From assembly GCA_021613535.1 (NCBI GenBank), contig CP075492.1:12462001-12526000 (forward strand): a DNA stretch of 64,000 bases, in the 5' to 3' direction. Position numbers and translations under genes: made by a program. This document shows, in pieces, positions 4,896-15,700 of the stretch (the first letter of the stretch is position 1; the number at the start of each line of letters is the position of its first letter). The notes under the pieces are model-generated. The model was given only the letters and a program-made list of their open reading frames with translations. It was not told the origin of the DNA and made no database searches. Source of the stretch: Adineta vaga (Eukaryota > Animalia > Rotifera).

Positions 4896-5628
4896 TGTAG
4901 TATATTAGTAAAAAAATGTTTTTGGTATGAGTTGTTCTTTTGAAAAGATCATAAAAATGAATCTTTTGATTGAGTTGTTATTAATGACCTTATCGAGAGA
5001 AGAGATCAGATAAATTCCTGTACATGTGTTCGCATGATATTTCAATAATTATATACTAAATATAAATTTACTATCGGTCTAAAGATCAGTGCATTATCTA
5101 AGATTCAGTTAGACCCATGTTTTATACCTTTTATTTAGAATGCGCAGTTATATAAACAAATACGAACATCCCGATACAAAAAAAAAGACACTTGGTTAAA
5201 AAAATCGTTTATGAAAGTATGGAAAAACAAGTTCAGATTAATTAACAATTTGTATAGATGAACGGAAAGAGAAAAAAAAATATTAGTTTGATCAATGAAA
5301 TGATTATAATACAAAAGAGAGAAAAGAAATTTACACCGGCATATCGGAGTAAAGCAGATCGTTTATCTTTGTCACAGGTGGAGACATAAATGAAAAAGTC
5401 TATACTAGTAAGAAATAATTGCTGTAGAATAGAAAATTTATCTCTTATTATTTGTAATTGATCTTCATGTTTCCATTCTAAAATGAAACATGAATTCGAT
5501 TATTTAAAAACAGCAAATAACAAAAGCAAAACAAAAATAAATAAATAAATCAAGCAGGTATGATATTTCATATGAAATAATAATAGCAGCAGGTCATTAC
5601 TGGGATGCAGCAAAAGCATTTTATGATA

Positions 5629-8600
5629 TCAATATCGTTTGGAAACACTGCCTACTTGAAGAATGGAAGGGCATTGTTCAACAATTTTAACAAGTAAACC
5701 ATCTGTATATTGTTCCAGATCTTTCACACGAGTATCACGTTTCTTTATTAGATCAGTTTGATATGCAATGACATGAAGAAGTTCCTTTTAAAGAGAATAA
5801 AATTATGTATAAACGATATTATAACACGACAAATATCATACTTCACGGTCAAGATAATCAAGTTCTTGACGAACCTTTGGATTTACTACTACACTTTTCA
5901 CATCTGGATAACCAAGTACATTCAAACCATTAGTAGCTGGTTTTTTCGATGGTGGAAGTGGAGCTGAATCTAAATACATATTGTTTTGTTTTAACAAGAT
6001 GATAATTGATTTCTAGGAAATATTTTAACTGCATACTTTTGCCTGTTGGTTCAAAAACAATATCTGGTAACATAGTATTTTTCTTTTGAGTTAATGGTGT
6101 TTGATTGTATACATTGGAAGATTTATTATCGGGCTAAATAGAATACAATGAAGATTTCTATCAATTACATATTCATCTGTGTATTCTCGTCATCTAGAAA
6201 ATCTATTCGACTAAGGTTACCTCGAAAAATGATGGTTGCATTATATCATGTGTCGGTTGTATTTTACGTCTAACAGAAGAACGCATACTGGATACTCGCT
6301 AAATAAAATTAGGTGTTTCGTTTTACAAAGAAGAAGTTTTTGAATAGGAAAATGCACCGTACACATACATACATACATACAAACAATAAAGCAACAGAAA
6401 GAGAGAAGAAGAGAGTAAATGTTAAAAGTCTTATTGAAATCAAAATTAGGAAAGTCATATGTAAATGAATGTATGTATGTATGTGTGTGTGCATTTTCCT
6501 ACGATAGTGATTACCTCTAATTTGCCGATGATTTCATCGATATCATCATCCGTAGAATTATGTTTGTCTTCAGATTCTTGTCGAGAAGGTAGAGCGCTAA
6601 TAGACGTAGCAGTTGTATCGTTTTTGGTCGATACGGAAGCAGATGGTGTATAGATATTATCCGATAGAGTAAGTTTAGAACGATCTTCATCTTTTGATGG
6701 TTGAGTTGTTTTCGAAGGTTGAAAGACAGGTGCCGTTCGTTTTGGTTTCTTTTCTTCGATTGTTTTTTGTTGTTGTTGTTGTTGTTTCGTTTTATTAAAA
6801 TAGTTATCAAAATTAATTTCTTCTTCAATTTGCTGTTTTGAACTGAAAAAACTTTCATCCGCATCTTGCTGTTCTTTTATTGTTGATAGACCAAAAAATG
6901 AATCCGCAATTTCATTATCTTTCGATTTATTTTGTGAAGATTTATATTCATTTATTGAATCAAATGCTGCTTCAATATCATCACCTGTTACGGATGAATT
7001 TCGAGTATGATCTGTTAATACGGGTGAATCTGAATTTGGTCTAGTTGTAATGATTGTTGGTACAGATTTTGCTGGTGGTGATAATGTTTCTTTTACTCGT
7101 CGTTGTTTTGGAGTCTTTTTCCATGAGAAATCATCATCAACAGAAACTTCATGTTGCACTTGTTGTGGCCGTTCAGATGGTAATGGTGCTGATGCATCAT
7201 CACCGCCATACATCGATGCCGAATCGAGTATAGATGACGTTTCATAATCAGATGTAACGGAACGACGCGATGAATATGGTGTGACACTATCCAACGTTGT
7301 ACCAAGGCCACTAGTACTCGTCGGAGCACGTGATTTCTGTTAAAAATACGTTTGTTCTTTTTTTTGTACTCAAAAGAAACAATGGAGGATTTCTGCCAAA
7401 GAAAACCCACTCACACATACATACATTTACTCTACAGTCAAAAGGATTTAGCGCAAAAGAAAGCAAACTTCAATAGCTACCTGTCTAGAACATTGACCTT
7501 GTCCTCTTTCCCCCCTCCTCCAAAACGAATACACTTAAATAGAATAAAAACTATGAACTTACCTTTCTCGGTTGTTCGGTTGTATTATTATTGAATGACA
7601 TACTATTCAACGACATGTGTGAACCAGAAAATGATGTTGTCTAAAAAAATTGAATATTAGATACGCAAAATTCTTCATTTTCGATAGAATACAATTTCAC
7701 TTACATCAGATATCGAATCTTCAAGAAAATCACGTCCATTGCCATCTTCACCACCACCAAGTCGGCGACGTTGATCACCTAACTAAAATAATATCACAAT
7801 CTTTTAAAATGTCTATGTAGAAATATTCAACCTACTTGATTTTCACCAGTATATTTCTCAGATTTACGATGCTTTGAAGCTGTTTTTAATTTATCACCTA
7901 AAGAAAACTCTTCAGTAATTTCCTCATATTTCAATCTAATCTTTTTTTCTTACCTAAGGAATGTTTTATATCTTTCAAAGATAAATGTTTTTTCTTTGTA
8001 GCTAAATCTAATACACTTCCCGTTGTATTATTCTTTGAATAAAATTGTAATGTAACATTAATTTCACCACGATCTTTATCGACTCGTCCTTCTTTATTTG
8101 CTAATGGATACCAACTGAAAAAAGACAATCTTGTTCGAATTATTCTATTTTAAAGCTAAAGCTTTTCTAACTTTGTATGAATACGATCATAATCTTGTAA
8201 ATCACGTAATGGTACATAGGCACGTCCGATGAAATCTCCTTTTGACAAAGAACTTTTATTACTATGATAAACAGTTAATTTGATTGTTGCATCATCAACA
8301 ACTGGCCTAGAACGTATATATATTTATCTTCGATTTAAAAAAAAGTATTATCTCTTATTTCATCTTACATATCGCATTGCTCATGCCAATCAGGTGTAGT
8401 ACACTTTTCACGCACAGCAGTGGCAAATTTCTCTTTTCCCATACCAATCGTACAAAATGCATCTGGTCCTGTTAAATACAAGGAACGTCTGCTGAATTTA
8501 TTGTCTATATGATACTCACCGCCATTTTTTCCTTTATCCGGTAAATTTCGTGCTTGATTAACTATTAAACAAAAGGATAAATGTTGAAAACAATCAAAAA

Positions 8601-8655
8601 TTGCTTTCTTACCAGTACAACTGCAATAATTTGGAGTTAACATTAATCTTGACAT
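5629..8655 (-). CDS. RAB11FIP: Rab11 family-interacting protein, class I (Rip11/RCP-like): C2 domain plus C-terminal Rab11-binding domain; multi-exon
   Basis: N-terminal exons give LTPNYCSCT-VNQARNLPDKGKNG-GPDAFCTIGMGKEKFATAV and WYPLANKEGRVDKDRGEINVTLQF (C2). Last exon ELLHVIAYQTDLIKKRDTRVKDLEQYTDGLLVKIVEQCPSILQ matches the FIP RBD. Stop at 5629-5631. Confidence 0.88.
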
Positions 8656-9355
8656 GATGATTTTTTACAAGAATCTTAAAGAATATAATCGAAAAAATAA
8701 CCTTACGTTAAATTACTCAGCATTTATACTTTTACAACTGACGCATCTCTAACAACAAAACATCACGAAAAGAACGAAGAAAGGAAAAGAAAAAGAAAAT
8801 TTTTTCTTGCTCTCTCTCTCTCTCTTTTTCTTTTTCTTTCTTTCTGTCTATTCACTTAATCAAGTTGCCCGCCGTCGTAAACTGAAGACATAAATAAAAA
8901 AAAGGATATGTTTAGTGAGCAAACATTTGATGACGAAAAGAGAAAGGCCTGATCAACCGACACAAGTATGTACTTCTTTCTTTTCTTATATCATCTCCAA
9001 AATTCAAAACGTTTTTCTTTCTGTAGGAAAAAAGGTAATGCAAAGAAATCAATAGATGAATCATCTTTCTCTCACATAGACGTAACAAAATAAAAATAAT
9101 ATTCATAACGAATATTCAGGTGGGAAATTAAAAACACCTTCGATTTTCAATGACAAACAAGGCATAGCACGATAGTTTAACTATTGTCGAACGTCATAGG
9201 TGATTGAGTGAGACGTGTGTCCTTCGACTAGAATCAATTATCGAACGTGCAAAGCAAGGAGACAAAATGGATGAAACTTAACACATTTTTGTTTATCCTT
9301 GCTTTTTTAATGACACTCAATCTGTTTGTATTCTTTATTCATTTATTCAAGTGAA

Positions 9356-11321
9356 TTATGAAGGCATAAAATGGTGAGAATCACGTGGAAACATTGACAC
9401 GTCTCGAATATTTCGCACACCTAAATAACCCATGACCACACGTTCTAAACCAATCTTAGCGCCAGCATGTGGTGCACAACCATAACGAAAGGCTTCAATG
9501 TATGATCTTATCTCATCTGTATCGATATGATGATGTTTAACACGTTCGAGTAATAAATAAACATCTAATGATAAAGGAAAATAGTTTGGATATGATTGGA
9601 TTTATTATCAATATGATACCATGAATACGTTGCGAGCCAGAAAGGATTTCTTCACCACGCATGAACATTTGATAGCTGTTCGAAAGTGTCTATTCGTAGA
9701 ACAAAATAGAGTACATAATAAAGATTGTAAATGTTAATCAATATTTACTGCATTTTGAGGATCTGGCATTGTATAAAATGCTTGATTACTTAATGGATAT
9801 TTGTTAAGAATATAAAAATCTGTATGGTACTAGAACAACGAACAATCTTAGGTCAAGGACAGATGGAAAGATAAATTCACTTTAGTTCTAACTATTTGAC
9901 CTAATTTTTCTTGTTCTAAAACATTTAATTCATCATTGAAAAACGTTCCAGTTTCATTTTTAGCTAATAATTTAATAGCATCTTGAAATTCTAAACGTAA
10001 ACTAAGAAAGCGAGATGGTTTATTTTCAAATAGAAATATTCTTTCAATTATACGTTGGTTTCAGATATTGAAATGGTTTACAATTATACAATTTGAGTAT
10101 TTCCATCTCCTTTGTGAATCTACAGAAAGCAACTCTTCATCACAATAATCAAATGATTTTCGCTAACCGTTGAGTTAGTTCTTCAAAAATTTGTACGAAC
10201 AAGTCTCCGAGAATATCTAATACTTCATGATAATGGTATTGAAATGACATTTCAAGATTAAGGCCAATAAATTCCGTTAAATGTCGTCTGGTACGACCAC
10301 CAAAATATCGAAATGCTAAATATAAATCAATATTGCTAGAGCTAAATTTGATCTTTAATCGGTAGTCTTTTACCGGTTCCAATAGTATAAACCTTTTCAA
10401 AATCAGCTGCTATAGCCATTTGTGTGTGGAATTGTGATGAAGGAGCTAGATATACTTTTGAATCGAAGTAAGGCATATAAAAGACATTTTTATTACGTTC
10501 TGATGGTGCTAGCCAACAGGAAGATTCATTATTATAAACTATAAGAAGAATATTTTCCTACCGAAAAGTATCTTGGGTGTATGAATTTCAATAAAACCTT
10601 TTGCATCAAGTATTTCATGAAATAACTTACAAATACCTGCTTGTATTCGAAAGATAGCTTGAGGGACTGGAGTACGTCTGCATATATGTACAATATTTCG
10701 ATCTTTATGAAAGAGGTACATTTACTTACAAATCGGTTACACGATTATTATATTGTGTAAATATATTATGAAGCGATTTTCGTTGATCTTCTTCGAAGAA
10801 AACAGGGCAAAATGTAGCATAATTCACAATAAAAAACTGTATAGAAAAAATACAAATATAGAAATTTCTCACAATCAACAAGAGTACCTTTTTCACATGT
10901 AATTCCAGATTTTTTTGTGTATTTAATTCAGTCGAAACAGGATTATTAGCTACTTCACCTTCTACATCAACTATACTCTCCCGTGTTGTACTAATCAAAG
11001 AAAGTTCAGATATTTTATTCTTCATATTAAATTGATCGTTTACTTAGCTACAAATTTTATCATTGATTTACTAACATCTTCATTGACAGAAAGAACAGCT
11101 GTCATTGTTTCTGTTTGGCTTCGAAGAGTTATAAAAGCTCGTTTACCATGATTACGAATCAAATGAATACGACTACGAATCCATATGACTTGTCCCAACA
11201 ATGTTTCATTTATATCCCGCATTGAAACCAATGAATGACTGAGCTGTTCTTGGCATTGAATGTATGATCTTATACCATAATTTTCTTTTGCATAATCATC
11301 TTCAGTAGATGTCGAAACCAT
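9356..11321 (-). CDS. Divergent paralog of cytoplasmic aspartyl-tRNA synthetase (DARS-like): intact frame, altered catalytic motifs; about 10 exons
   Basis: Spliced product is colinear with eukaryotic AspRS: OB-fold ([11 protein letters not shown]...ESIVDVEG...LELHV), motif 1 ([10 protein letters not shown]), [24 protein letters not shown], motif 3 (IGLERV) and SMFPRD. All junctions are GT-AG and in frame. Stop at 9356-9358. Confidence 0.9.
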
Positions 11322-12736
11322 ATCAGAAGATTGTTATCAATCAATTCAACTGAAAAGGAAACATTTCATCAGGTATCAGTGAACGATATTTATAAGTAAT
11401 CGAAGCAAAAATTTTCAAAAGCATTATTACGCATTCAACAAACAATTCTAGTTTTAAATCTTGTGTTCAGATTGATTTCTAAGATCATAAATTGATATAA
11501 ATTCTTTCTTGATATATCAAAAATCTGTTTTCATCAACATCAATCAGATGAAATTAATGTTTATGTGTTTGTTTGCTGTATTCACCTTCAATGTAACGAT
11601 TTCTATCAAAACTATAAAGCAATAAGGAATGAGTTATTTTCGAACTCATTTCTATGATTAATATCCAAAAATTTCATTCTACTAAAAACTATCGTAAGAA
11701 TTTCTTCGTTTCTCCTCTCCAGATATGAATACATTGTAATCAACTGTCTTTTTTTTCAATACCAGACAATAATATTCATCATATGATATGGACAATACAA
11801 GGTGACACTTTTTAGAATACATATCACTTTGTTAATGCATCACTCATGGTCACACGCATATCAAACTTATACAAAAAATAAATGTTCTACCCTCTCTCTC
11901 TCTCTCTGTCTCTATACATATACATATCATCAACATTGAAGACCGTTGTCAAAAGTAGTTGCCTATCTTTCTTCTTATATTCTGTTTTCTTTTCAATGTC
12001 ATTCACTAAACTTGTATGTCGTACTTGAAAAACCTAATCATCTATTTCGCTATTCGATCATTTCTATATTCTTTTTTTTCTGATTATTAATAAAGAAAGT
12101 CGAATAACTGCTTCAATTTGTATGGAACAGTTTTAGAACTCCAACAGACTGAAAAGGTAAACTAAGGCTAAAAACATAATTAACATATTTTAAAATAAAT
12201 CATCAATAATCCAATCTAACTTAGATTTATTCATTCACTTTTTCCTGTCGAAAATTTGTCAAAAACTGAGATTAGAAATTTCATTCACTAACCAATGAAT
12301 TCGTATATATGTTATAAAAACTTGACTAACGACATCTTTCAACATCTATAATCTAATTGGATTATTTTCTTAACCCAATAAAATCTCTTTATTCATTTTT
12401 GCATTCAAATATGTCAACAATTTGTTTGTTTTTATTTCTTTTTTTTTATTGAAAAATTAAAACGTGCAACTATGTCTAAACAAGTTTTTTTTATCTTTTT
12501 CTTTGAACTGAAATAATATTTTCTATGAAATAATCACACATACGTTCTCGTTTTCTTTTTTCGAGTATTTGATGTATTCATCATTGCAATGACAATCGCA
12601 GTATATTTTTCTTTTCAAGTATTCCCTTAAGGCCTTCGTTTTTTTTGTTATTTGAACAATAGAAAACAAAACATTTAGATTTACTACCTATTCATATTTC
12701 TAGATGTATATGTTGTCCTTGAATGGATAATTTATT

Positions 12737-15700
12737 ATGTCACATTCACCACCACACTATCATCTTTCGATCGTTAGTTTCGATCCGTTCGTGGGTAAAT
12801 CATGTTTATGTAAACGTTTAATTGATTCAAATCTTGATAATTATCAAACATTTTTATCGAATACAAATCCAAAAATATGGCCATGGTTTTATTGGGGTTC
12901 AATCAAACATCGACGATTAGATGAAAAACGTGAAGGAATATTTCATTTAATTGAACAAGCGTCCATTGATATTCGTAATTATGAATCATTTGAAAATTAT
13001 TGTAAACGAATATCAATATTAACATTACGAACAGATGATCGAAAAACGTTTCCAAAAGAAAAAATTCCTATTGAAGCATTTCTATGTCTCTATGATTTAT
13101 CATCGAATAAACCAGTGGCAGATTTTCTCATTTTTCTTCATACATTATTGAAAACTCGTCGTCCAATTATTCTTGTTACAACAAAAAATGATCTTGTTAC
13201 TAATCAATCGATTCTATCACTTCAATTTCAACATACAATTCATAATTCATTACCACAAATTCCAATTATACATACATCCGCACATGAACATGTGAATATT
13301 CAATCTGTCCTTGAACTTGCGTTATATGCATGTGATGAAACAACTAGAAAAGCTTTTCATACAAAATATCTTCCACCAAATTATACTGATGCTTATAAAA
13401 ATGAACAATCATTAAAACATGTTATTCAAACCGAATATCGAGCATTATTAAGTCGACATGTACCCGATTGTCGTATTGCTTTATGGGGAAAGTTTTATGA
13501 ACGATGGCAACATCATACAAGTGTTCAAACATTTATTGATATGTTCGGTAAAGAACAAGCTCAATGTTTATATAATGAACATATTGAAGAATTAACGAAG
13601 AATTCGCGACAAAAACTAATCGATGAAAGATTAATTCCAATTCTTGATATGCTTTTAAATGATCAGAAAACAAAAGTATCACGGTAAATTTTATCAATTC
13701 TTTCTTTTAAATTACTTTAATTAGTTCATATGTCATCCATCGAATGGAATTTCTTCGTCTTCTTTCGCTATGAGGGATGTTCAAGAGCCGGAAGTCAGCT
13801 TTGAAAGATCTTATGAGCTGAGAATATATTCTCAGGCTATATAGTAGTCTGATTACAAGTTAAGAATGAAAAATGTTGAAAGAAATCTATGATTCGTTTA
13901 ACAATAAAACGATATTCTCATAAAGATGATGCCGCAAGTCATACAACTATTGATGATGTAATATATCATTTGTCATAGAGAACAATATTCTCTTTTTTCT
14001 AAGCAAAGTCTAAGTATTAAAATTTCAGGAAATGGTCATTATACACTTGAAAAAGTAACAATGCTAGGATTAGTTCAGTTGTCCATTGAATGGAAATGGA
14101 AAAAAAAAGAAAAAATTCCATGTATTCTGCATGAGATGTTACAGATTCGAATAAGAAATGAAGATGTTCGATTCACTGTTATTGCATTTGGACTGTTTTT
14201 GTAGAAATTGGGATTATGCTCGTTCACAAATGCAAAAACATCCTCATTATTCTTCAACTGTGATATCGACTTCAATGTGGTCAGATTTGGAACGTAAAAA
14301 TACAACAAATTCTCTTATCATTCCTGAAGATTTATTAGATACACTTGAAGCACGTTTATGTTTTGAATCTTATATGAATAATCGTCAAATCGAACAAATT
14401 CGTCGAGTCAATTGTCGATCATTCTTTGATTTATTAAATCGATTTTCTGATGCTGGTCTTGTTCATTATGGTGATTCATATGATAAAGATTGTGTTTATT
14501 TTTTGGGTCGTGAATGTTATGAATCATTGAATGGACAAGATCGTTTACGAGTTTTTGCATTACATCAATCATATTTATATCGTTTAATATGTTTACAATT
14601 TGTTGAATTATTATTTGAATCATTGGAAATCTTTACAACAACATTTGAAAAAATGAATAAAGCAACGAAAGTACCAAAAGAAAATCATGGAAAAACAACA
14701 ATGGTAACGATTGATGAAATCTTTCAAGAGGAAATTATTGAACATATTAAACATGATCCAAGGTAAGTAATCATTCTCCTCGTCCTATGAAAAAGTAGTA
14801 ACATAATGGAACTGATCACATAGTTAGAGATACTTCAGATAAGAATGAAAAGTTATCATACTAATAAAAGAATTCAAGTATATATCTTTTAATATAGATA
14901 TCAAGCATTAAACAAACGTGAATCTGATCGTCATCGTTTAATCATGTGTCATTGTCATTTTCTGTACGATAGTATCTACTATCCATCATTGAATCTGAAT
15001 CGTTTATTAAAACAACGTCGACGTTCATTTAAACATCGAAAATCATCTTCATTGTCATTAACAAGTAATGTTAGTGTCGATGAAAATTTCTGTCCATATA
15101 CTCGAATAATGGTGTCTAATGATGATAATGAAGGAAAATCAAAGAAAAAATTAGAAATTGCTTGTCCAATGGAAAATAATTGTGCAGATATTCGAAATCT
15201 CAATGAAATTTTATTGAAATTGAAATTTAAAAATATTCAAAAGTAATTTAAGAAAAAAGAACATTTCTTGTAAAATTTCATGTAATTTTTCGTTGATTAG
15301 GAATATTTTAATTTGTGGTCATGATACTGATGTACAACATTGTCTACGTTTATATTCCGTATGTGATAATAATCGAACTATTTCAACGAAACATGTTTTT
15401 TTTTGTTCTTCAATTTTTAGAATGATTTAACCGATATTCCAGTGAATTTAATCACATTCAATACGCTTAGATCTGAAAGAATCGATGGTAAAACATTTCA
15501 CTTTGTATAAAAGTATTTATTTATTTAAGAAATTTTTTTCTTCACGATAGGTTGTCGTTTGTATCATCTAATGCTCAAAAAATCCTACGAGATATTGTTC
15601 AACAGAAAAAAATTCAGTTAAATACTGATCGTAAGTTTTATTTCCATCGAACGATAAGTATCTGATGATTGTTTTGATTCAAGATATTCCAATTGTGAAT

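What the first reader, a model, noticed from the sequence alone, without database searches (positions are those of the whole stretch)
9356..11321. Intact aspartyl-tRNA synthetase paralog with a rewritten amino-acid pocket, motif 2 and anticodon contact
Seen: the gene has no stops or frameshifts and is colinear with cytoplasmic AspRS, yet near-invariant motifs are changed. Flipping loop SEGGA>SERNK; AQSPQLYKQ>APSSQFHTQ (about 10419-10446); motif 2 FRAEDSNTHRH>[11 protein letters not shown] (about 10281-10313); GLDIEM>GLNLEM; RPFY>QAFY; NSYDMF>NSYQMF; pocket-floor HAGGGIG>HAGAKIG (about 9449-9469); OB-fold NVQA>TMTA. The motif 2 and motif 3 arginines, EEILSG and QRIH are kept. Established (recalled from yeast AspRS structures): the YKQ Lys and QRIH Arg bind the Asp side chain, the GLD Asp binds the alpha-amino group, the FRAE Glu contacts ATP and tRNA, and the OB-fold Gln reads anticodon U35. 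aaRS paralogs have been repurposed before (EpmA, HisZ, SLIMP, AsnA-type synthetases). Inference: this is not the housekeeping AspRS but a retained pseudo-synthetase or neofunctionalised ligase/tRNA-binding factor. The new Lys in GAKIG might replace the lost Lys from another position, giving an altered substrate pocket.
Basis: partly seen in the sequence, partly recalled or inferred. Interest (0 to 1): 0.82.

Follow-up and report, generated by a model that had tools for sequence, protein, structure and literature searches.

The report
Expressed AspRS duplicate with ablated pocket
In the rotifer Adineta vaga, one of the two cytoplasmic aspartyl-tRNA synthetase genes left by an ancient genome duplication is still intact, transcribed and correctly spliced. 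It has lost the residues that hold aspartate and magnesium, so it is most likely a repurposed 'pseudo-synthetase', and related rotifers have broken or deleted this copy.

Summary
Window 9356-11321 (minus strand) holds an 11-exon, 477-aa gene. It is identical to NCBI protein UJR10555.1 (Adineta vaga) and colinear with cytoplasmic AspRS.

It is not the housekeeping enzyme. A canonical 503-aa AspRS lies on chromosome 6 in a colinear (homoeologous) block and shares all ten of the window gene's intron positions and phases.

The chromosome-3 copy has replaced yeast-numbering K306, E327, D342, D471 and G526. It keeps both class II arginines, E478, R485 and motif 1.

RNA-type contigs from three studies splice all ten introns exactly as modelled. 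Selection is relaxed but not absent: dN/dS against the homoeolog is 0.1-0.3, allelic pN/pS is about 0.3, and indels occur only in non-coding DNA. A neutral ORF would carry stops after 0.1 substitutions per site.

The orthologous position is a stop-riddled pseudogene in Rotaria and is deleted in three other bdelloid contigs, including the closest relative found.

Best reading: a lineage-specifically retained, catalytically ablated AspRS homoeolog. It keeps its fold and dimer interface and may pair with canonical AspRS or bind RNA. A new ligase activity or slow decay remain possible. This is a new member of the known class of synthetase-like pseudoenzymes.

The parts
9356..11321 (-). Whole coding region of the divergent AspRS homoeolog. 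Eleven exons: 11321-11044, 10990-10888, 10836-10730, 10677-10562, 10508-10374, 10315-10168, 10119-10054, 10001-9881, 9829-9749, 9689-9620, 9564-9356. Product 477 aa.
   Evidence: model; identical to P0001 = UJR10555.1; all 10 introns skipped in RNA-type contigs X10, X13, X18; none in DNA run X8
11322..11350 (-). Short 5' UTR. RNA contigs end near 11348-11350. An in-frame stop lies upstream of the ATG, and there is no upstream coding exon. The canonical copy has an extra 39-nt first exon.
   Evidence: records 4 and 6
11097..11108 (-). OB-fold strand TMTA. Yeast Q138, the anticodon U35 contact, is Thr74 here. R119, F127 and E188 equivalents are kept.
10730..10836 (-). Hinge exon, 36 nt (12 codons) shorter than in the canonical copy (107 vs 143 nt). 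The DTRLDNRV stretch is rewritten.
10563..10592 (-). Motif 1 ([10 protein letters not shown]), kept. It is part of the predicted dimer interface.
10489..10503 (-). Flipping loop SEGGA -> SERNK
10420..10446 (-). AQSPQFYKQ -> APSSQFHTQ. Yeast S301 and Q303 are kept; K306 is Thr230.
10281..10313 (-). Motif 2 FRAEDSNTHRH -> [12 protein letters not shown]325 and H334 are kept; E327 is Phe251. The loop gains four positive charges net.
10248..10265 (-). GLDLEM -> GLNLEM. Yeast D342 is Asn266; E344 is kept.
9773..9784 (-). RPFY -> QAFY
9621..9680 (-). [19 protein letters not shown] -> [19 protein letters not shown]. Yeast D471 is Gln392. E478, S481, Q484 and R485 are kept.
9440..9469 (-). Motif 3 HAGGGIGLER -> [11 protein letters not shown]525 is Ala and G526 is Lys445; R531 is kept.
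12737..13687 (+). Neighbouring RhoGAP-FF1 gene, used as the synteny anchor. On the other side lies a C2/RBD-FIP gene at about 5600-8700 on the minus strand.

Best explanation
The gene is the chromosome-3 homoeolog (ohnolog) of the cytoplasmic aspartyl-tRNA synthetase of Adineta vaga, left by the ancient bdelloid tetraploidisation.

Shown:
- The chromosome-6 copy kept the enzyme function.
- This copy kept the OB-fold plus class IIb fold, motif 1, both ATP-binding arginines and most of the dimer interface.
- It replaced the residues that hold the aspartate side chain and alpha-amino group (K306T, D342N, E327F), one Mg2+ ligand (D471Q) and a motif 3 glycine (G526K).
- The flipping loop and motif 2 loop were rewritten into basic sequences, and the hinge is shorter.
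- It is transcribed, spliced and kept open by selection in A. vaga.

Inferred:
- It no longer makes Asp-tRNA(Asp).
- It acts as a pseudo-synthetase through what it still has: dimerisation, possibly as a heterodimer with canonical AspRS as SLIMP does with mitochondrial SerRS, and/or binding of tRNA or another polyanion in a cleft that has become about seven charges more positive.
- The function is lineage-specific, because other bdelloids have lost this copy.
For: - **Homoeology.** Window 1-24 kb is colinear with C6:2590-2625 kb. The two genes share all ten of the window gene's intron positions and phases. Chromosomes 3 and 6 are published homoeologs (PMC8494291).
- **Canonical copy elsewhere.** It is 503 aa with all motifs intact and is 90% identical to the A. 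ricciae enzyme. The other class IIb loci are a mitochondrial-type AspRS, AsnRS and LysRS.
- **Residue map** onto yeast 1ASY/1ASZ.
- **Expression.** All ten introns are removed in contigs of runs X10, X13 and X18 from three studies, and both alleles are seen.
- **Selection against the homoeolog.** dN is 0.30-0.33 and dS 1.06-2.6.
- **Selection among alleles.** There are 13 nonsynonymous and 11 synonymous variants, pN/pS about 0.32, binomial P 0.006-0.056. All three indels lie in intron or flank.
- **Neutral simulation.** The chance of no stop codon is 0.5% at 0.1 substitutions per site and 0 at 0.2 or more.
- **Conservation.** 78% of canonical-invariant columns are kept.
- **Fold.** AF2 mean pLDDT is 78 and pTM 0.70. 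Low confidence is found mainly at the termini and in the hinge, flipping loop and motif 2 loop; those three regions are also disordered in the human crystal structure (PMC3824080).
- **Dimer.** The complex model with canonical AspRS P0160 scores 0.90 against a best control of 0.00. That mark was reached by 51 of 78 solved complexes and 2 of 108 mismatched pairs. Runs agree in at least 61% of contacts and partner pLDDT is at least 83. Predicted interface residues are 73% identical to the C6 copy, against 58% in the rest of the catalytic domain (P = 0.028).
- **Charge.** Net charge over the active-site motifs goes from -2 to +5.
Against: - The orthologous copy is a pseudogene in Rotaria sp. Silwood2 and is absent from the same interval in three other C3-type contigs, including the sister lineage L032. 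No conserved function across bdelloids exists.
- No close ortholog (above 57% identity) turned up in the protein collection.
- The allelic selection signal rests on 24 variants and is marginal if the transition bias is high.
- Logan contigs show that a spliced RNA exists. They give no expression level and no evidence of protein.
- The complex pass may only reflect likeness to solved AspRS homodimers, and it cannot separate homodimer from heterodimer. The partner was also the A. ricciae enzyme, not the A. vaga one.
- Loss of activity is inferred from residue roles that I recall from yeast AspRS work (Cavarelli et al. 1993, 1994). It was not measured.
- Active-site positions are not clearly more changed (6 of 20 that I listed from memory) than canonical-invariant columns overall (22%).
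Confidence: 0.55

Rival explanations
1. Decaying duplicate. The copy lost its enzymatic role long ago and is on its way to the pseudogene or deletion state already reached in other bdelloids. Transcription and splicing simply persist, and the protein does nothing useful.
For: A Rotaria pseudogene with in-frame stops lies at the syntenic site. The gene is deleted from L028, L033 and L032. Its branch is 27 times the median. 22% of canonical-invariant residues are changed, including catalytic ones. pN/pS of 0.32 is relaxed for a synthetase.
Against: The 477-codon ORF and 20 splice sites are intact although synonymous sites are saturated against the homoeolog (56% of 4-fold sites differ). Neutral simulation gives no more than a 0.5% chance of no stop at 0.1 substitutions per site, while the sister lineage L032 differs by about 33% in neighbouring coding DNA. 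Indels occur only in non-coding DNA. The predicted interface is preferentially conserved. At most a very recent loss of constraint is compatible with this.
Confidence: 0.2
2. Neofunctionalised ligase. The ATP site still works (R325, F338, H334, E478, R531 equivalents kept), and the rebuilt pocket (K306T, D342N, E327F, D471Q, new K445) adenylates a different carboxylate, one without the alpha-ammonium group or with different charge. The product is transferred to tRNA or to another acceptor.
For: Both class II arginines, E478, S481, Q484, R485, S301 and Q303 are retained. Purifying selection is present. The charge change is directional rather than random. Precedents exist among AspRS/LysRS relatives, namely AS-A and PoxA/EpmA (PMC9437257).
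Against: One of the two Mg2+-binding acids is gone, and a lysine replaces a motif 3 glycine that lines the ATP site (recalled). Retention of the kept residues (14 of 20) is no higher than for invariant columns in general (78%). The gene has been lost in relatives. No assay was possible.
Confidence: 0.12
3. A still-active, specialised AspRS isoform, for example for stress or a particular tissue, that tolerates the substitutions.
For: It still scores above the curated cut-off of the archaeal/eukaryotic AspRS model TIGR00458 (386.8 vs 368.4 bits). Anticodon-binding residues R119, F127 and E188 are kept. Ciliate proteins annotated as AspRS carry similar changes, and whether those ciliates also have a canonical copy was not established.
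Against: Four charged residues that contact aspartate, its amino group and Mg2+ in yeast AspRS are replaced at once. They are invariant in the 27 canonical sequences compared. The score is 125 bits below the canonical enzyme.
Confidence: 0.05

Closest known systems
Canonical cytoplasmic AspRS (yeast Dps1, PDB 1ASY/1ASZ; human DARS1, PDB 4J15/6IY6; A. vaga chromosome-6 copy)
   Same: Same domain order (OB-fold, hinge, class IIb catalytic domain). 49-57% identity. Same intron positions as the A. vaga chromosome-6 gene. Motif 1, the motif 2 Arg and the motif 3 Arg are kept. It still passes TIGR00458.
   Different: K306T, E327F, D342N, D471Q, G526K and Q138T. The flipping loop and motif 2 loop are rewritten, the hinge is 12 residues shorter, and there is no N-terminal extension exon. 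The branch is 27 times longer.
SLIMP, the seryl-tRNA synthetase-like paralog of insect and other animal mitochondria (PMC10570016; PMC9437257)
   Same: A full-length synthetase paralog in an animal whose active site is ablated while the canonical partner is kept. SLIMP works as a heterodimer with the active paralog. Here a heterodimer model with canonical AspRS passes the test and the predicted interface is preferentially conserved.
   Different: SLIMP derives from a different parent enzyme (SerRS), is mitochondrial, and is conserved across many animals with experimental support. This gene is cytosolic-type, so far found only in A. vaga, and its orthologs elsewhere are lost. Heterodimerisation is only modelled.
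HisZ (HisRS-like regulatory subunit of ATP phosphoribosyltransferase)
   Same: A class II synthetase paralog without adenylation activity that survives as a binding or regulatory subunit (PMC9437257).
   Different: HisZ is bacterial, lacks the anticodon-binding domain and has a known partner. None of this has been established here.
AsnA / AS-A and PoxA (EpmA), catalytic AspRS/LysRS-like ligases
   Same: They use the class IIb catalytic core for a non-tRNA reaction (PMC9437257). P0001 gives weak hits to their models.
   Different: Those proteins lack the OB-fold and keep a complete amino-acid and Mg-ATP site. This gene keeps the OB-fold and has lost pocket and metal residues.
Degenerate AspRS copies in Adineta steineri (P0176, P0177) and AspRS-like proteins of ciliates (P0057 Tetrahymena XP_001011634, P0096 Paramecium)
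   Same: The same motifs are hit: motif 2, SYD, the motif 3 glycines and the flipping loop. Tetrahymena also has D342N.
   Different: These are independent events. The A. steineri copies sit at a non-syntenic locus with an intron-less 3' half and a motif 2 deletion. The ciliate proteins are only 38% identical.

Membership tests
Functional archaeal/eukaryotic-type aspartyl-tRNA synthetase | N-terminal OB-fold anticodon-binding domain plus class IIb catalytic domain | tested here: met
   PF01336 and PF00152 are precomputed for P0001. TIGR00458 scores 386.8 bits against a cut-off of 368.4. The AF2 model has a confident OB-fold and catalytic core.
Functional archaeal/eukaryotic-type aspartyl-tRNA synthetase | Class II motifs 1, 2 and 3 with the invariant motif 2 and motif 3 arginines | tested here: met
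   IEIHTPKI is present. R249 (= yeast R325) and R450 (= yeast R531) are present.
Functional archaeal/eukaryotic-type aspartyl-tRNA synthetase | Aspartate-binding residues (yeast K306, D342, R485, with Q303/S301) | tested here: not met
   K306 -> T230 and D342 -> N266. R485, Q303 and S301 are kept. The residue roles are recalled from Cavarelli et al. 1994 and were not re-read (paper not held).
Functional archaeal/eukaryotic-type aspartyl-tRNA synthetase | Acidic residues for Mg2+/ATP and the motif 2 Glu (yeast D471, E478, E327) | tested here: not met
   D471 -> Q392 and E327 -> F251. E478 is kept.
Functional archaeal/eukaryotic-type aspartyl-tRNA synthetase | Forms Asp-AMP and charges tRNA(Asp) | not testable with these tools
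   Needs an enzyme assay.
Synthetase-like pseudoenzyme paralog (SLIMP / HisZ kind) | Arose by duplication of a synthetase whose canonical copy is retained in the same genome | tested here: met
   The canonical copy is at C6:2609254-2611446, in a colinear block with the same introns.
Synthetase-like pseudoenzyme paralog (SLIMP / HisZ kind) | Catalytic residues ablated while the fold is kept | tested here: met
   Loss of activity itself is inferred, not measured.
Synthetase-like pseudoenzyme paralog (SLIMP / HisZ kind) | Expressed and under purifying selection | tested here: met
   Spliced RNA contigs come from three studies. dN/dS is 0.1-0.3, pN/pS about 0.32, and neutral simulation rejects an unconstrained ORF.
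Synthetase-like pseudoenzyme paralog (SLIMP / HisZ kind) | Binds a defined partner (the active paralog or another protein) | tested here: inconclusive
   The complex model with canonical AspRS scores 0.90 against a best control of 0.00. This may only reflect likeness to solved AspRS dimers.
Synthetase-like pseudoenzyme paralog (SLIMP / HisZ kind) | Conserved across a clade of species | tested here: not met
   It is a pseudogene in Rotaria sp. Silwood2 and deleted in L028, L033 and L032. No ortholog above 57% identity was found.
Pseudogene (unitary or processed) | Stops, frameshifts, lost splice sites or loss of introns | tested here: not met
   The ORF is intact, all ten introns are GT..AG and are used, and no coding indel appears in any allele seen.
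AsnA / AS-A type AspRS-like ligase | Catalytic core only (no anticodon-binding domain) with a complete Asp and Mg-ATP site | tested here: not met
   The OB-fold is present and pocket and metal residues are lost.

The most novel reading that the evidence does not exclude
The protein is not dead but a new class IIb ligase. It keeps the ATP-clamping arginines and R485, and it uses a pocket stripped of three acidic residues and lined with new basic ones (K445 and the R254/R256/R257 loop). With this it would activate or bind an anionic substrate that lacks an alpha-ammonium group, or clamp an RNA 3' end without catalysis. That would give A. vaga a lineage-specific activity born from the bdelloid genome duplication.
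Probability: 0.12. Interest if true: 0.8.

Novelty: new member of a known kind. Interest (0 to 1): 0.5.

Why it matters
Synthetase paralogs that lose catalysis yet persist (SLIMP, HisZ) are among the clearest examples of how essential enzymes are repurposed. A 2022 review table of duplicated synthetases lists only AS-A and ErdS for AspRS (PMC9437257). A search of the held literature found no full-length, active-site-ablated cytosolic AspRS paralog.

This case has an unusually clean natural history. It has a dated origin in the bdelloid tetraploidisation and an intact canonical partner in the same genome. Natural 'knock-outs' exist in related species, as a pseudogene and as deletions. A. vaga also has a chromosome-level reference genome.

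The gene is therefore a tractable test of whether asymmetric homoeolog divergence produced a regulator of AspRS, an RNA binder or a new ligase, or whether it is a very slow death. It is also a practical warning for annotation: family models still call it an aspartate-tRNA ligase.

Tried and rejected
1. The word-index search with exon 1 by reference found nothing (one search was a coordinate slip). The length filter hides full-length kin, so this blank means nothing.
2. Searches used the exon-1 reference and then database protein P0001, which turned out to be identical to the model. Exons were joined only inside local scripts from window.fa.
It was redone by recomputing the segments from references.
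4. The tree placement of P0001 inside the bdelloid clade is unsure because of its long branch. Its pairing with P0156 (89/83) was not used.
5. A. steineri P0176/P0177 were considered as orthologs and rejected. Their locus is non-syntenic and the 3' half lacks introns.
6. I tested whether the active-site rewrite predates the Adineta-Rotaria split. Only 2 of 11 co-derived positions share the same residue (G->K in motif 3; I/V->T), no more than chance would plausibly give, so timing is left open.
7. The Cavarelli 1994 paper is not held, so residue roles rest on my recollection plus the numbering map. PMC3532385 gives a garbled role for D342 and was not relied on.
8. Whether the ciliates with similar AspRS-like proteins also have a canonical copy could not be settled.
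9. The complex prediction passed. It cannot tell homodimer from heterodimer and may be memory of solved AspRS dimers, so it is used only as compatibility evidence.
10. Earlier scan notes added nothing.
Full report
**What is there.**
- The window is G000:C3:12462001-12526000 of a 100.8-Mb, six-contig, 30% GC genome.
- On the minus strand between 11321 and 9356 I built a model of 11 exons separated by ten GT..AG introns of 48-59 nt. It gives a 1434-nt CDS and a 477-aa protein with no stop or frameshift.
- A search of protein representatives with exon 1, given by reference, returned a 477-aa database protein, P0001. It is letter-for-letter my model.
- Its source name is 'hypothetical protein I4U23_014755 [Adineta vaga]', UJR10555.1.
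- Searches used the exon reference and then P0001.

- Translation of the exact coordinates gives SERNK (10489-10503), APSSQFHTQ (10420-10446), [11 protein letters not shown] (10281-10313) and GLNLEM (10248-10265).
- It also gives QAFY (9773-9784), NSYQMF (9663-9680), QRIH (9621-9632), [10 protein letters not shown] (9440-9469) and TMTA (11097-11108).
- The HMMER alignment to the yeast crystal chain (1ASY/1ASZ; chain index + 67 = yeast numbering) maps the residues as follows.
  - Kept in the catalytic domain: R325=R249, H334=H258, F338=F262, E344=E268, S301=S225, Q303=Q227, E478=E399, S481=S402, Q484=Q405, R485=R406, R531=R450.
  - Replaced in the catalytic domain: E327->F251, D342->N266, K306->T230, D471->Q392, G525->A444, G526->K445.
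  - In the OB-fold: R119, F127 and E188 are kept; Q138->T74.
- The roles of these residues are my recollection of Cavarelli et al. 1993/1994, a paper that is not held here. K306 and R485 bind the Asp side chain, D342 and E327 the alpha-amino group, D471 and E478 Mg2+, R325 and R531 ATP, and Q138 reads U35.
- PMC3824080 confirms that the flipping loop and motif 2 contact the tRNA 3' end, that the hinge contacts the D-stem, and that the N-terminal helix handles tRNA.
- In an alignment of 27 canonical AspRS sequences, 182 columns are invariant. 40 of them (22%) are changed in this protein.

**It is not the housekeeping enzyme.**
- A six-frame scan of the whole genome with PF00152 found seven loci.
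- The closest is C6:2609254-2611446, a 12-exon, 503-aa gene with every canonical motif: SEGGA, AQSPQFYKQ, FRAEDSNTHRH, GLDLEM, RPFY, NSYDMF, HGGGGIGLER.
- That gene is 90% identical to the A. ricciae enzyme and 54-56% identical to the window gene.
- The remaining loci are a bacterial/mitochondrial-type AspRS (C6:12.34 Mb), AsnRS-type genes (C4:12.53 Mb by model; C2:11.83 Mb by eye) and a LysRS pair (C1:6.67 and C4:6.31 Mb).

**Origin.**
- Window 1-24 kb is colinear, inverted, with C6:2590-2625 kb.
- The two AspRS genes share all ten intron positions and phases of the window gene, and seven of its eleven exons match in length. The canonical copy has one extra 39-nt first exon and a hinge exon 36 nt longer.
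- Simion et al. 2021 state that A. vaga chromosomes 1, 2 and 3 are homoeologous to 4, 5 and 6. They also give a mean homoeolog nucleotide divergence of about 13% (PMC8494291).
- The pair is therefore a product of the bdelloid tetraploidisation.
- Its CDS divergence is 33%. In a maximum-likelihood tree the window protein sits inside the fully supported bdelloid clade, with an end branch of 1.66 against a median of 0.062.
- The divergence is thus strongly asymmetric.
- Neighbouring homoeolog pairs in the same block are also fairly diverged (62-68% amino-acid identity in aligned segments, dN 0.19-0.27). The AspRS pair has dN 0.30-0.33.
- So this copy now evolves like an ordinary protein rather than like a synthetase.

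**Expression.**
- Twenty public runs of the same organism hold the stretch.
- Contigs of three RNA-type runs from three studies (X10 2024, X13 2018, X18 2022) skip every intron exactly at my boundaries, with CT..AC ends on the plus strand.
- One 1539-nt contig spans almost the whole mRNA. DNA run X8 shows no such joints.
- RNA contigs end near 11348-11350, so there is no upstream coding exon.
- A second allele, for example R356/T357 -> E/A through changes at 9886, 9888 and 9889, is present in the RNA contigs too.
- Because these are contigs, nothing can be said about expression level.

**Selection.**
- Against the homoeolog, dN is 0.30-0.33 and dS 1.06 (NG86) to 2.6 (ML). 56% of shared 4-fold sites differ.
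- Among the alleles and strains laid on the gene there are 11 synonymous, 13 nonsynonymous and 9 intronic differences. The three indels are all in an intron or the 5' flank.
- pN/pS is about 0.32. The binomial P is 0.006 at kappa 1 and 0.056 at kappa 6.
- I simulated neutral substitutions on the canonical CDS, ignoring indels. The reading frame stays stop-free in 6.7% of runs at 0.05 substitutions per site, 0.5% at 0.1 and none at 0.2 or more.
- The frame has therefore been protected for nearly all of its history.

**Relatives have lost it.**
- The gene lies between a C2/RBD-FIP gene and a RhoGAP-FF1 gene (window 12737-13687).
- RhoGAP-FF1 proteins fall into a chromosome-3-type clade (SH-aLRT 100). 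The chromosome-6-type sequences lie outside it, and the window's gene is sister (99) to a Logan contig, L032.
- In Rotaria sp. Silwood2 the chromosome-3-type interval (L026, about 5807-8447, minus strand) holds an unannotated AspRS relic. It has in-frame stops inside exons, and both class II arginines are gone.
- In two environmental bdelloid scaffolds (L028, L033) and in L032 the interval is only 0.6-1.3 kb and holds no AspRS remnant, against 3.7 kb in the window.
- Apart from P0001 itself, no protein in the large collection exceeds 57% identity to P0001.
- At least two independent losses are needed to explain this. The copy is dispensable outside the A. vaga lineage.
- The Rotaria relic shares G526K with A. 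vaga, but only 2 of 11 co-derived positions agree. Whether the site was rewritten before the families split is open.

**What the protein still has.**
- 78% of canonical-invariant columns are kept.
- The AF2 model has mean pLDDT 78 and pTM 0.70. Confidence falls below 50 only at the two ends, in the hinge (139-158), the flipping loop (199-224) and the motif 2 loop (250-259).
- The hinge, flipping loop and motif 2 loop are also unseen in the human crystal structure (PMC3824080).
- A complex model with canonical AspRS (A. ricciae P0160, residues 40-505) scored 0.90 against a best control of 0.00.
  - That mark was reached by 51 of 78 solved complexes and 2 of 108 mismatched pairs.
  - Runs agree in at least 61% of contacts and partner pLDDT is at least 83.
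  - This shows likeness to the class II dimer. It does not prove binding and does not separate homodimer from heterodimer.
- The residues in that predicted interface are 73% identical to the chromosome-6 copy, against 58% in the rest of the catalytic domain (Fisher P = 0.028).
- Over the seven active-site motifs, net charge moves from -2 to +5, while the whole protein changes by only +4.

**Interpretation.**
- Shown:
  - it is a homoeolog;
  - a canonical copy exists;
  - the catalytic residues are replaced;
  - it is transcribed and spliced;
  - it is not evolving neutrally;
  - it has been lost in relatives.
- Inferred:
  - it cannot activate aspartate;
  - it works through dimerisation and/or binding of an anionic ligand.
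- The closest worked example is SLIMP, a SerRS paralog with an ablated site that functions as a heterodimer with the active paralog (PMC10570016; PMC9437257).
- I put 0.55 on the retained pseudo-synthetase reading, 0.20 on slow decay, 0.12 on a new ligase activity and 0.05 on residual AspRS activity.
- Family models still score the protein above the AspRS cut-off (386.8 vs 368.4 bits; the canonical enzyme scores 512), so automatic annotation would mislabel it.

**Novelty.**
- Synthetase-like pseudoenzymes are a known kind.
- I found no described full-length cytosolic AspRS example in the held literature.
- With a single species and no assay, it ranks as a new member of that kind, of moderate interest.

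Noticed in passing
L025:10001-11645 (Adineta steineri CAJNOM010000216.1); proteins P0176, P0177: A. steineri has two further degenerate AspRS copies: motif 2 partly deleted, NSYN, RCEE, QHIH, GGSIG. They sit at a locus with no synteny to either A. vaga block, and the 3' 228 codons have no introns. They look like independent retro-type copies annotated as 'Aspartate--tRNA ligase, cytoplasmic'.
   Followed up: partly
L026:5807-8447 (minus strand; Rotaria sp. Silwood2 CAJNWK010000006.1), also L027: An unannotated AspRS pseudogene with in-frame stops lies in the gap between the C2/RBD-FIP and RhoGAP-FF1 genes. It is the chromosome-3-type counterpart of the window gene.
   Followed up: yes
P0057 (Tetrahymena thermophila XP_001011634) and P0096 (Paramecium tetraurelia XP_001437523): Ciliate proteins named aspartate-tRNA ligase carry analogous changes: the motif 2 Glu becomes Leu, SYD becomes SYK, the motif 3 glycines become Cys/Ala, and Tetrahymena also has GLD->GMN and K306->S. 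Whether these ciliates also have a canonical AspRS was not established. If they do not, the motif losses may be less disabling than assumed.
   Followed up: partly
window 9881-9893: A cluster of allelic differences (9886, 9888, 9889, 9893) changes Arg356-Thr357 to Glu-Ala at the end of exon 8. Both forms appear in RNA-type contigs, so both alleles seem to be transcribed.
   Followed up: partly
G000:C1:6673431-6674753 and G000:C4:6312028-6313384; G000:C6:12344642-12345843; G000:C4:12533301-12534751; G000:C2:11834579-11835662: The other class IIb synthetase loci of the genome are a LysRS homoeolog pair at matching positions on chromosomes 1 and 4, a bacterial/mitochondrial-type AspRS, and two AsnRS-type genes.
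   Followed up: partly
P0151, P0152 (Entrophospora sp. SA101, 687-691 aa, PF22152 + PF00152): Two proteins from a fungal assembly rank directly after the self-hit by bit score (51% identity over 68% of the query). This may be a fused gene model or non-fungal DNA in that assembly.
   Followed up: no
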